Source of the DNA: Octopus bimaculoides
Lineage: Eukaryota
Direction: 5' to 3'
Assembly (NCBI RefSeq): GCF_001194135.2
Contig: NC_068991.1
Coordinates: 45,540,059 to 45,602,273, forward strand
DNA: 62,215 bases
Shown here: one piece after another, positions 51,718 through 52,536 of the stretch
How positions within the stretch are numbered: the stretch's first letter is position 1
How the letters are laid out: each line of letters starts with the position of its first letter
Made by a program: the position numbers and the translations under genes
The notes under the pieces: generated by a model
The model's database searches: none
What the model saw: only the letters and a program-made list of their open reading frames with translations
What the model was told of the DNA's origin: nothing

Positions 51718-51859
51718 TATATATATATATGTATCAGAAATAATTGAGATTCAGTTGAGTTAGGTACTTAAGTTGATGCACCAAGTCAGTGCGGTATTAT
51801 CCGTACAACTAAAAGTAAGGTGAATAAAATCAAAATGAGTAACAGGATATGAAGAGGTG

Positions 51860-51947
51860 ATGCAGTACGACCGTTTCAAGCGGCTCCATTTAATTGAACA
51901 ATGCAATTATTACATCAATTTAAATGCAGGGCTATCCTCAGCTGCAT
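51860..51947 (-). ncRNA. Type I hammerhead ribozyme motif with long stem II
   Basis: RC: atgcag CTGAGGA t agc [49 nt, hairpin catttaaattga/tcaattaaatg] gct t GAAAC ggtc GTA ctgcat; 6-bp stem I. Confidence 0.78.
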
Positions 51948-52261
51948 AAATAAATAGAATTTTTAATCAGTTTGATACATTAATATAATTTTACTCAAAT
52001 TCTCTAATAGAGCAAGAAGAGGAAAAAGTTCCAAGTTGCTACTAATGTAGCTAATAATATACTACACTTCTAAGAGCTGTATGAAGTTTGTTAGGGTCAT
52101 AGCTTGTAAAAGATTGTGTTTCATTTTAAATCTATTAGTAATTCTTTAAATCAACTACCAAATCTAAGGCTAGAGGACAGTGTCTGTTTAAAATGGAGGG
52201 CAGAAGTTAGTTGAGTAAAATTATAGTAATGTGTCTAACTGATAAAAAATTCTATTTATTT

Positions 52262-52348
52262 ATGCATCTGAGGATAGCCCTGCATTTGAATTGATGTAAT
52301 GATTGCATTGTTCAATTAAATAAGTCGCTTGAAACGGTAGTAGTGTAT
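52262..52348 (+). ncRNA. Type I hammerhead ribozyme motif with long stem II
   Basis: atgcat CTGAGGA t agc..gct t GAAAC ggta GTA gtgtat; stem I kept by two G.U pairs. Confidence 0.7.
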
Positions 52349-52437
52349 CACCTCTTGATATCCTGTTGCTTATATATATATATATATATATATATACATA
52401 CATAAACGTAAAATGAAAACAGAACGCAAAGGATTCC

Positions 52438-52536
52438 GCGGTACACGTGTTTCAAGCTTTATACACAAGCTGTCGTTGCATCATTATATGAGTATATAAA
52501 TGATAGAAAGGACGGTTTAAAGCTATCTTCAGCCGC
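52438..52536 (-). ncRNA. Type I hammerhead ribozyme motif, second sequence family, 3' of a PLE
   Basis: RC: gcgg CTGAAGA t agcttta [56 nt] taaagct t GAAAC acgt GTA ccgc; palindromic stem III ACACGTGT. Confidence 0.8.

What the first reader, a model, noticed from the sequence alone, without database searches (positions are those of the whole stretch)
51838..52536. Three hammerhead ribozymes in 700 bp on both strands, around a rod-forming inverted repeat
Seen: HHR motifs with intact cores at 51860-51947 (-), 52262-52348 (+) and 52438-52536 (-); the first two are the arms of a ~165-bp inverted repeat. A minus-strand transcript cut at both minus HHRs (after GUA) would release a 576-nt RNA (52441 to 51866) that folds back on itself, and its complement carries the plus HHR. 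Established: tandem HHRs yield retrozyme circular RNAs, HHRs in both polarities plus a rod fold mark viroid-like RNAs, and PLE terminal repeats carry HHRs and are often inverted. Inference: this is either a retrozyme or viroid-like unit or, more parsimoniously, a PLE terminal-repeat inversion lying next to another PLE end. Caveat: the two minus HHRs belong to different families, so a circle junction would not rebuild stem I (gcag against ccgc).
Basis: partly seen in the sequence, partly recalled or inferred. Interest (0 to 1): 0.85.

Follow-up and report, generated by a model that had tools for sequence, protein, structure and literature searches.

The report
Retrotransposon ribozyme debris in a microsatellite
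The three hammerhead ribozyme motifs are real, but they are the tail ends of dead Penelope-like retrotransposon copies that landed in one (TA)n microsatellite, a known pattern, not a viroid-like or circular-RNA gene.

Summary
Observation confirmed. Three type-I hammerhead (HHR) motifs with intact cores sit at 51860-51947(-), 52262-52348(+) and 52435-52539(-). Shuffles give 0 such matches. The first two lie in a 164-bp inverted repeat.

- HHR-B is the only HHR downstream of a 5'-truncated, stop-ridden RT-linker-GIY-YIG pseudogene on the same strand (54641-53363).
- Full-length relatives of that pseudogene carry the Hydra-clade PLE diagnostics: RWK, DKT, CxCx5C, no CCHH, CxxC/CxH.
- In 33 of 48 related metagenome loci an HHR with the same core layout lies 56-375 nt past the endonuclease. 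Where a (TA)n tract follows, it starts 44-161 nt after the cut site.
- A1/A2 are head-to-head 3'-end fragments of a second family flanked by (TA)n on both sides. This is what cDNA synthesis primed from both target strands would give.
- A third, decayed family-A copy lies at 43.5 kb.
- At least four more intact-core HHR motifs occur elsewhere in the window, by PLE coding remnants or at microsatellite edges.
- There is no tandem unit. The two minus-strand HHRs share nothing outside the core, and A1 would be buried in a ~135-bp dsRNA stem.

What is new: very long helix II (56-72 nt). Family A's coding parent was not found. Ordinary; low interest.

The parts
51651..51734 (.). (TA)n microsatellite, left target flank of the A1/A2 insertion
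   Evidence: TRF period 2, 42.5 copies; sequence read
51740..52210 (-). A1: 5'-truncated 3'-terminal fragment of HHR-bearing repeat family A. Its 3' end lies about 5 nt from the left (TA)n. The part 52052-52210 is assigned by position only.
   Evidence: 68% identity to copy C over 51740-52051; the 3' boundary is shared with C at ...GAATCTNAATTAT
51860..51947 (-). HHR-A1: AUGCAG/CUGAGGA/57-nt helix II region/GAAAC-GGUC-GUA/CUGCAU. Cut after 51866.
52211..52373 (+). A2: inverted internal fragment of family A, head-to-head with A1. It ends 31 nt after its cleavage site, at the right (TA)n.
   Evidence: inverted-repeat arms; alignment (about 90% to A1)
52262..52348 (+). HHR-A2: core intact, helix I with two G-U pairs, loop 3 GGUA (self-complementarity lost), weakened helix II
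52371..52404 (.). (TA)n tract shared by the 3' ends of A2 (from the left) and the B element (from the right): a tail-to-tail arrangement
   Evidence: TRF; sequence
52435..52539 (-). HHR-B: UUUGCGG/CUGAAGA/72-nt helix II region closed by 7 bp AGCUUUA-UAAAGCU/GAAAC-ACGU-GUA/CCGCGGA. ACACGUGU is a perfect palindrome. Cut after 52442. A 45-nt tail runs to the (TA)n.
52540..53362 (-). Presumed 3' UTR of the B element (826 nt from the stop to HHR-B); holds no other HHR core remnant
53363..53791 (-). GIY-YIG endonuclease pseudogene of a Hydra-clade-type PLE: in-frame stop, decayed CxCx5C, retained CxxC (CKLC) and CxH (CKH)
   Evidence: tblastn P0008 aa 458-601, E 2e-22; translation; profile search gives 4661 representatives
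54049..54641 (-). RT-thumb and linker remnants of the same 5'-truncated PLE copy, collinear with the endonuclease
   Evidence: tblastn P0092 aa 490-577, P0008 aa 365-432 and aa 259-340
54612..54668 (.). (ATAC)n(AT)n microsatellite at the truncated 5' end of the B element, followed by a 21-N gap
55002..55394 (+). Second Hydra-type endonuclease pseudogene, head-to-head with the B element and 27% aa identical to it, so an independent insertion
56529..56576 (+). Compact HHR downstream of the + strand endonuclease (across the 968-N gap), followed about 105 nt later by (TA)n at 56682-56703
   Evidence: model R1, 11.6 bits, E about 1; sequence
43527..43870 (-). Copy C of family A: HHR core broken (CUGA to ACGA), GAAAC-GGCC-GUA retained (perfect palindrome ACGGCCGU), 3' end at a (CA/TACA/TA)n microsatellite
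43194..43259 (+). Another intact-core HHR, tail-to-tail with copy C across the microsatellite 43410-43527
   Evidence: model R1, 15.9 bits, E 0.043; scanner

Best explanation
The 700-bp cluster is a by-product of retrotransposition. It is not a functional RNA gene. A (TA)n microsatellite was hit repeatedly by Penelope-like elements (PLEs), which carry a type-I hammerhead near their 3' end and prefer (TA)n targets.

Event 1 gave A1/A2. An RNA of 'family A' was reverse-transcribed from nicks on both target strands. This left two 5'-truncated cDNA copies joined head-to-head, with their 3' ends facing outward against (TA)n on each side. A1 is 471 nt on the minus strand. A2 is 163 nt on the plus strand and was primed internally, 31 nt past the cleavage site. 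The 164-bp inverted repeat, and therefore the 'rod', is simply this junction.

Event 2 gave the B element. A Hydra-clade-type PLE (RT plus C-terminal GIY-YIG endonuclease) inserted on the minus strand with its 3' end in the same (TA)n. It was 5'-truncated within the RT and has since decayed. HHR-B is its 3' hammerhead.

A third Hydra-type copy lies head-to-head with B further right.

In active elements the HHR is thought to trim tandem pLTR-ORF-pLTR transcripts. At this locus none of the motifs has a same-family partner on the same strand, so no unit-length RNA is expected.

What is shown: the motifs, the inverted repeat, the (TA)n flanks, the PLE pseudogene upstream of B, and the same HHR type in related elements. 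What is inferred: dual-strand priming as the origin of A1/A2, that family A is PLE-derived, and that the motifs are inactive here.
For: (1) Collinear minus-strand tblastn hits of full-length relatives at 54641-54408, 54282-54082 and 53791-53363 (E down to 2e-22) place an RT-linker-endonuclease pseudogene directly upstream of HHR-B. No other HHR core lies between its stop codon and HHR-B.

(2) The relatives are a family of about 710 aa (1313 hits). Their consensus shows RMRWK, ADKT, YRDD, CNCRxKxxC, a GIY-YIG without CCHH, CxLC and CRH. These are the diagnostics listed for the Hydra clade in PMC8557442. hhalign against the window's canonical PLE RT aligns motifs B, C and the thumb, E 3e-4.

(3) In 33 of 48 related loci with at least 400 nt of downstream sequence, a plus-strand HHR lies 56-375 nt after the endonuclease. 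A calibrated covariance model gives 72 hits at E<=0.01, 65 of them on the endonuclease strand. L002, L003 and L021 show HHR pairs about 2.45 kb apart, the pLTR arrangement.

(4) Those HHRs share the window's layout CUGANGA-(G/U)-stem-(C/U)-GAAAC-palindromic loop-GUA, including the U..U flank of helix II in 12 of the 33.

(5) In the relatives where a (TA)n tract follows the HHR, it starts 44-161 nt after the cut site. In the window the distances are 126 nt (A1), 31 nt (A2), 45 nt (B) and about 105 nt (the 56529 copy).

(6) Tail-to-tail HHR pairs around (TA)n recur in L003, and a similar convergent pair around a short AT-rich stretch in L050. Opposite-strand HHR pairs 100-700 bp apart were reported for Schistosoma PLEs (PMC4209133).

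(7) Literature: PLE insertions are highly 5'-truncated, often have an inverted 5'-truncated copy adjacent, and Hydra and Naiad elements target (TA)n (PMC8557442). A purified PLE protein cleaves and extends both target strands and initiates RT internally (PMC11167929).

(8) Family A is a dispersed repeat. Copy C has the same 3' boundary at a microsatellite, and identity rises toward the 3' end (53% upstream, 77-80% in the 3' half of the HHR, 72% in the tail).

(9) Further intact-core HHR motifs lie at 12783-12832(-) (at the 5' edge of a canonical PLE RT remnant), 48970-49019(-), 43194-43259(+) (at a microsatellite edge) and 56529-56576(+) (downstream of the second Hydra-type endonuclease). A degenerate one lies at 24070-24115(-).
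Against: No family-A copy was found linked to a coding region, so its PLE parentage rests on HHR architecture, (TA)n targeting and truncation pattern alone.

HHR-B lies 826 nt past the stop codon, against 56-375 nt in relatives. An unrelated insertion in between, or B being a separate fragment abutting the endonuclease copy, is not excluded.

A2 ends 95 nt short of the family's 3' end. That is longer than the 30-40 bp 'tail' difference described for PLEs.

Helix II is 56-72 nt, far longer than in any related locus. The 10.1-11.1 position is U.U rather than the usual G-C.

Pfam and PDB sequence searches give only weak or no RT and GIY-YIG signals for this divergent clade.

The source organism and genome-wide copy numbers are unknown.
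Confidence: 0.85

Rival explanations
1. Family A (A1, A2, C) is a short non-autonomous HHR-bearing element, not truncated copies of an autonomous PLE. It would be a solo 'monomer' of an animal non-LTR retrozyme or a SINE-like PLE derivative, mobilised in trans by PLE proteins.
For: No coding sequence is attached to any of the three copies. Retrozyme consensus sequences in Xenopus are related to PLE pLTRs, and monomeric derivatives are common and dispersed (bioRxiv 10.64898/2026.07.22.740005). The fragment sizes (163-471 nt) fall in the retrozyme range.
Against: No tandem copy of the unit occurs anywhere in the window. The three copies have different 5' ends, as random 5' truncation would give. 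PLE 3' UTRs can be long: 826 nt in the B element.
Confidence: 0.2
2. The locus is a retrozyme-like or viroid-like unit. A minus-strand transcript is cut at HHR-B and HHR-A1, releasing a 576-nt self-paired RNA that is circularised. Its complement carries HHR-A2.
For: Two minus-strand HHRs with intact cores lie 576 nt apart and one plus-strand HHR lies between them. The fold is strong, z = -21. Low GC is typical of animal retrozymes (PMC7229834).
Against: No direct repeat of a unit: only a 20-nt core match at 75%. A1 and B are unrelated outside the core. A chimeric junction pairs only 4 of 6 positions in helix I. The helix III loops ACGGUCGU and ACACGUGU cannot form a heterodimer, and no same-family pair exists on one strand. 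The A1 HHR is sequestered in a dsRNA stem of about 135 bp. The flanks show ordinary PLE insertion anatomy.
Confidence: 0.03
3. The inverted A1/A2 pair has been co-opted as a hairpin-RNA locus. Read-through transcripts would form a dsRNA of about 135 bp, processed into small RNAs that silence family-A or PLE transcripts.
For: Any transcript across 51835-52373 must form the long stem. Inverted TE copies are a classic source of endo-siRNAs (general knowledge, not tested here).
Against: There is no evidence of transcription. The arms have drifted to about 92% identity with an indel, which suggests neutral decay. The structure is the expected accidental product of PLE insertion.
Confidence: 0.05
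4. The motifs are chance matches, or the inverted repeat is an assembly artefact.
For: Rfam models are silent. The window is a gapped draft with 22 N runs.
Against: The strict descriptor gives 0 of 100 shuffles against 3 observed. The features match those of related PLE HHRs. The finding lies in a gap-free stretch, 42216-54668. The arms differ by about 8%, carry an indel and are unequal parts of the element, unlike read-level palindrome artefacts.
Confidence: 0.01

Closest known systems
Hydra clade of Penelope-like elements (Craig, Yushenova, Rodriguez & Arkhipova 2021, PMC8557442)
   Same: C-terminal GIY-YIG without CCHH; CxxC and CxH motifs; insertion into (TA)n; an HHR near the 3' end; heavy 5' truncation; head-to-head inverted copies. 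Full-length relatives of the window's pseudogene show RWK, DKT and CxCx5C, and a unit length of about 2.45 kb.
   Different: The window copies are dead fragments. The linker cysteines are lost in the B copy. The 3' UTR is about 830 nt. Helix II of the HHRs is 56-72 nt instead of 12-26 nt.
PLE hammerheads (Cervera & de la Pena 2014, PMC4209133)
   Same: [quoted passage not shown]
   Different: No G10.1-C11.1 pair here (U/U flank, then A-U). A very large insertion in helix II. Activity untested.
Animal non-LTR retrozymes (Cervera & de la Pena 2020, PMC7229834; Li et al. 2026 bioRxiv)
   Same: AT-rich, short, type-I HHR, related to PLE terminal sequences.
   Different: Retrozymes are direct tandem repeats of one 150-450-bp unit that give unit-length circRNAs. 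Here there is no tandem unit, and the two same-strand HHRs are heterologous.
Twin priming / dual-strand target-primed reverse transcription (L1 5' inversions; PAc Poseidon in vitro, PMC11167929)
   Same: Head-to-head 5'-truncated copies with 3' ends outward at the target; second-strand priming at an internal site of the RNA.
   Different: The inverted segment duplicates, rather than continues, the direct segment (164-bp overlap). That implies two template molecules or template switching. Not demonstrated for this element.

Membership tests
Hammerhead ribozyme, type I | Conserved core CUGANGA ... GAAA ... UH with A15.1-U16.1 | tested here: met
   All three motifs. Copy C fails (ACGAGGA).
Hammerhead ribozyme, type I | Three helices around the core, helix I open | tested here: met
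   Helix I is 6-7 bp. Helix II folds alone as one extended imperfect hairpin. Helix III is only 2 bp plus a 4-nt loop.
Hammerhead ribozyme, type I | Match to curated covariance models (Rfam) | tested here: not met
   No hit at gathering score or at E<=10. The compact HHRs of related PLE loci are missed too, so the test does not discriminate.
Hammerhead ribozyme, type I | Self-cleavage | not testable with these tools
   Needs in vitro transcription. PLE HHRs with a short helix III show low activity as monomers (PMC4209133).
PLE-type hammerhead | Extra nucleotide after A9, long helix II, short helix I, palindromic 15.2-16.2/loop 3 | tested here: met
   A U follows CUGANGA in all three. B has a 7-bp closing stem. 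ACACGUGU (B) and ACGGCCGU (C) are perfect palindromes. ACGGUCGU (A1) is self-complementary with G-U pairs. A2 has lost this.
PLE-type hammerhead | G10.1-C11.1 pair | tested here: not met
   U/U flank followed by A-U. The same U/U variant occurs in 12 of the 33 related-locus HHRs.
Hydra-clade PLE (element carrying HHR-B) | RT followed by a C-terminal GIY-YIG lacking CCHH, with CxxC and CxH | tested here: met
   Only the RT thumb is left in the window copy.
Hydra-clade PLE (element carrying HHR-B) | CxCx5C linker, RWK and DKT motifs | tested here: inconclusive
   Present in the full-length relatives. In the window copy the linker cysteines are mutated (SNCRVSQLN), and the N-terminal part is missing through 5' truncation.
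Hydra-clade PLE (element carrying HHR-B) | HHR near the 3' end, and insertion into (TA)n | tested here: met
   HHR-B lies 45 nt from (TA)n on the endonuclease strand. Relatives.
Hydra-clade PLE (family A: A1, A2, C) | Physical link to a PLE ORF | tested here: not met
   No coding remnant is attached to any copy in the window. The assignment rests on HHR type, 3' ends at microsatellites and the truncation pattern.
Animal non-LTR retrozyme | Direct tandem repeats (2 or more) of one 150-450-bp HHR unit | tested here: not met
   TRF finds only periods up to 10 bp in 51000-54000. The only direct repeat is 20 nt of core at 75%. A1 and B do not align.
Animal non-LTR retrozyme | Unit-length circular RNA in vivo | not testable with these tools
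   No transcript data.
Viroid-like / HDV-like circular RNA | Autonomous RNA replicon, with rod or branched pairing over the whole molecule and a ribozyme in each polarity | tested here: not met
   The sequence is embedded in genomic DNA with TE insertion anatomy. Pairing is one IR stem plus a 212-nt loop and a 98-nt tail. The junction would not rebuild one ribozyme.

The most novel reading that the evidence does not exclude
The long-helix-II, U/U-flanked hammerheads of families A and B are a functional lineage-specific HHR variant. At this locus, read-through transcription would yield a processed 576-nt hairpin or circular RNA, or small RNAs from its stem, that feeds back on PLE activity.
Probability: 0.04. 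Interest if true: 0.6.

Novelty: new member of a known kind. Interest (0 to 1): 0.22.

Why it matters
It mainly removes a false lead. A striking layout (three ribozymes, both strands, a long hairpin) turns out to be what PLE insertion into microsatellites routinely leaves behind.

Three modest points of value remain:
- It documents Hydra-clade-type PLEs, and a second HHR-bearing family, in this SSR-rich invertebrate-like genome.
- It shows HHR variants with a 56-72-nt helix II that escape both Rfam and clade-specific covariance models. Genome scans that rely on those models will undercount PLE hammerheads.
- The A1/A2 junction is a clean natural example of the head-to-head product expected if both target strands prime reverse transcription, as seen in vitro for a Poseidon PLE.

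Tried and rejected
Searches that led nowhere:
- Rfam cmscan of the whole window at gathering score and of 51500-52900 at E<=10. No hammerhead family; only AT-repeat noise such as mir-297. The same library misses the HHRs of 20 related loci.
- Own covariance model R1. It scores only the 5' halves of A1 and A2 and misses B, so it is inconclusive for the focal motifs. It did find other HHRs.
- Word-indexed protein search with the 119-aa endonuclease fragment: no hit. The full HMMER scan was needed.
- Pfam on window ORFs: only sub-threshold GIY-YIG (E 0.076) and RVT_1 (E 0.005). Pfam on relatives: 1 of 23 each. PDB sequence and profile searches: nothing.
- L001 (the contig of P0092) has too little flank and no HHR core.
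- IMG/VR scans with family-A and family-B HHR strings: one hit in a GC-rich contig without CUGANGA upstream, judged chance, and none.
- Literature search for hammerhead plus Penaeus: 0 papers. The supplement of PMC4209133 is not held.
- tRNA/SINE check: none.

Readings rejected: the retrozyme, viroid-like and assembly-artefact readings (see rivals), and the idea that the two Hydra-type endonuclease copies came from one event (only 27% aa identity).

I suspected a penaeid shrimp source from the SSR richness, but could not verify it and do not rely on it.

Full report
**1. The observation**

The window is a gapped draft of a eukaryotic genome rich in simple repeats: 22 runs of N and about 10% tandem repeats. 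The finding lies in a gap-free stretch, 42216-54668.

Reading the sequence and searching with CTGANGA-N50-80-TGAAACNNNNGTH gives exactly three hits: 51866-51941(-), 52268-52342(+) and 52442-52532(-). None of 100 dinucleotide shuffles gave a hit. A general type-I descriptor that I wrote finds these three and one further locus (43194-43259, +). Block-shuffled windows give a mean of 0.185 hits.

Each motif has:
- the full core (CUGANGA, GAAA, A15.1-U16.1, cleavage triplet GUA);
- a 6-7 bp helix I;
- a 2-bp helix III with a 4-nt loop;
- a very long helix II region (57, 56 and 72 nt) that folds on its own as a single imperfect hairpin closed by AGC/GCU (A1, A2) or AGCUUUA/UAAAGCU (B).

The inverted repeat is real: arms 51835-51998 and 52211-52373, about 92% identical with one indel. 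The 576-nt arithmetic is right. The predicted fold is a stem of about 135 bp with a 212-nt branched loop and a 98-nt tail. That is simply the inverted repeat seen as RNA.

Rfam finds no hammerhead. It also finds none in 20 related loci that hold compact PLE hammerheads.

**2. What surrounds HHR-B**

Two small ORFs, 53363-53725(-) and 55026-55394(+), are 27% identical and look like GIY-YIG domains.

A full HMMER scan with their alignment found 4661 representative proteins at E<=0.001. A few are long, and these have an RT-like region N-terminal to the domain.

tblastn of those long proteins against the window gives collinear minus-strand hits at 54641-54408, 54282-54082 and 53791-53363. This is a 5'-truncated RT-thumb/linker/endonuclease pseudogene with an in-frame stop and mutated linker cysteines.

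Its 5' end abuts an (ATAC)n(AT)n microsatellite. Its 3' UTR runs 826 nt to HHR-B with no other HHR core on the way. The element ends 45 nt after the cleavage site at the (TA)n tract 52371-52404.

**3. Which element family**

P0092 has 1313 homologues, mostly about 710 aa on contigs of 2.3-3 kb.

Their consensus shows RMRWK, ADKT, YRDD, CNCRxKxxC (that is, CxCx5C), a GIY-YIG core without internal cysteines, CxLC and CRH. These are the features that Craig et al. 2021 list for the Hydra clade of PLEs, along with small size, canonical HHRs and insertion into (TA)n.

hhalign of the family against the window's own canonical PLE RT remnant (12.9-14.1 kb) aligns RT motifs B, C and the thumb, E 3e-4.

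Pfam and PDB give little for this divergent clade. The clade assignment therefore rests on motifs, not on a phylogeny.

**4. Do such elements carry this kind of HHR?**

A scan of metagenome contigs returned 80 related loci.
- In 33 of the 48 with at least 400 nt downstream, a type-I HHR lies on the endonuclease strand 56-375 nt past the domain.
- L002, L003 and L021 have a second HHR about 2.45 kb upstream, the pLTR arrangement.
- A covariance model built from 23 of these HHRs finds 72 hits at E<=0.01 in the loci, 65 on the endonuclease strand.
- Their layout is CUGANGA-(G/U)-stem-(C/U)-GAAAC-palindromic loop-GUA. This is the layout of A1, A2 and B, including the U..U flank in 12 of the 33.
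- Where a (TA)n tract follows, it starts 44-161 nt after the cut site. The window values are 126 nt (A1), 31 nt (A2), 45 nt (B) and about 105 nt for a fourth HHR at 56529-56576(+). That fourth HHR sits downstream of the plus-strand endonuclease copy and ahead of (TA)n 56682-56703.

**5. Family A**

A1 extends well beyond the repeat arm. The stretch 51740-52051 is 68% identical to a third copy, C, at 43527-43855(-). In C the core is broken, but GAAAC-GGCC-GUA keeps a perfect palindrome.

A1 and C share the same 3' boundary next to a microsatellite. Identity rises from 53% upstream to 72-80% in the 3' part, as expected for the 3' recognition region of a retroelement.

Helix I position 1.1/2.1 reads C-G (A1), G-U (A2) and A-U (C). 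This is weak covariation.

No coding sequence is attached to any A copy. Its parent is therefore inferred, not shown.

**6. Origin of the inverted repeat**

A1 has its sense on the minus strand with its 3' end at the left (TA)n. A2 has its sense on the plus strand with its 3' end at the right (TA)n. Their truncated 5' ends meet at 52210/52211.

This is the geometry expected if nicks on both strands of one (TA)n target each primed cDNA synthesis inward. Three published observations fit:
- A Poseidon PLE protein cleaves and extends both strands in vitro and starts reverse transcription internally (PMC11167929).
- Inverted 5'-truncated copies next to PLE insertions are a described hallmark (PMC8557442).
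- Opposite-strand HHR pairs 100-700 bp apart were noted in Schistosoma (PMC4209133).

The A2/(TA)n/B tail-to-tail arrangement recurs at 43194(+)/microsatellite/C(-) in the window and in related locus L003. L050 has a similar convergent pair around a short AT-rich stretch.

The stretch 51.6-56.7 kb is thus a nest of at least three PLE insertions in TA-rich microsatellite DNA.

**7. Why not a retrozyme or viroid-like RNA**

- There is no tandem unit.
- A1 and B align nowhere outside the core.
- A B-to-A1 junction would pair 4 of 6 helix-I positions.
- The helix III loops of A1 and B cannot form a heterodimer, and no RNA from the locus holds two same-family HHRs. Short-helix-III PLE HHRs cleave poorly as monomers.
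- In the minus-strand transcript, A1 is paired to antisense A2.

**8. Verdict**

The motifs are genuine PLE-type hammerheads, and the locus is PLE debris. It is a new member of a known kind.

The only unusual feature is the very long helix II, which hides these motifs from covariance models.

Untested: catalysis, transcription, the genome-wide census and the family-A parent.

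Noticed in passing
window 48970-49019 (-) and 12783-12832 (-): Two copies (about 88% over 111 nt) of a minimal hammerhead without helix III: ACAC/CUGAUGA-A-GGCUGAUA..UAUCAGCC-GAAAC-GUU/GUGU. This is the min-HHR type of canonical PLEs. 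The second copy lies inverted at the 5' edge of the canonical PLE RT remnant.
   Followed up: partly
window 12710-14200 (+) and 30378-30662 (-): Canonical (CCHH-type) PLE remnants. One is a frameshifted RT plus GIY-YIG (..VYRKPTFTGRYLNFNSHHP.., ..VYSIPCSCGRLYIDET..) interrupted by a 10-N gap. The other is a separate zinc-finger/GIY-YIG fragment. So at least two PLE clades coexist in the window.
   Followed up: partly
window 43194-43259 (+): Intact-core type-I HHR (G10.1-C11.1, 34-nt helix II, GUC site), tail-to-tail with family-A copy C across the microsatellite 43410-43527. No coding sequence is attached.
   Followed up: partly
window 56529-56576 (+): Compact HHR (6-bp helix II, 1-bp helix III) just after the 968-N gap. 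It lies downstream of the + strand Hydra-type endonuclease and about 105 nt before (TA)n 56682-56703. The covariance-model score is only 11.6 bits (E about 1).
   Followed up: partly
window 24070-24115 (-): Degenerate hammerhead-like remnant (CUGAAAA..GAAACAGUACUGUA), 18.3 bits with the PLE-HHR model.
   Followed up: no
window 42743-43000: A 258-bp near-perfect palindrome (91.5% self-complementary) flanked by TA-rich sequence. It looks like a MITE or foldback element.
   Followed up: no
window 101-520 (+), 34132-34410 (-), 49337-49600 (+): C-terminal cysteine-rich tails typical of non-LTR (LINE) RT ORFs (..ETIDHL/I.SGCPVL..). The stretch 49257-49789 is 60% identical to 49-582.
   Followed up: no
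window 49035-49121, 20251-20334, 20439-20521, 23082-23160, 23543-23629, 30747-30825, 41546-41633; also 50631-50872 with 5-6 relatives: Two short dispersed repeat families (about 85 bp and about 160-230 bp, 73-87% identity), in both orientations, of unknown type.
   Followed up: no
L003 2515-2700, L050 2225-2400, L001 about 470-560: Related Hydra-type loci share a conserved GTTGAGCAC motif about 60-70 nt downstream of the HHR, seen inverted on both sides of (TA)n. It may be a 3'-end recognition element. It is not seen in the window's families A or B.
   Followed up: no
L007 1673-1744 (-): A tRNA gene (Rfam 40.7 bits) about 320 nt downstream of the PLE HHR in a metagenome locus.
   Followed up: no
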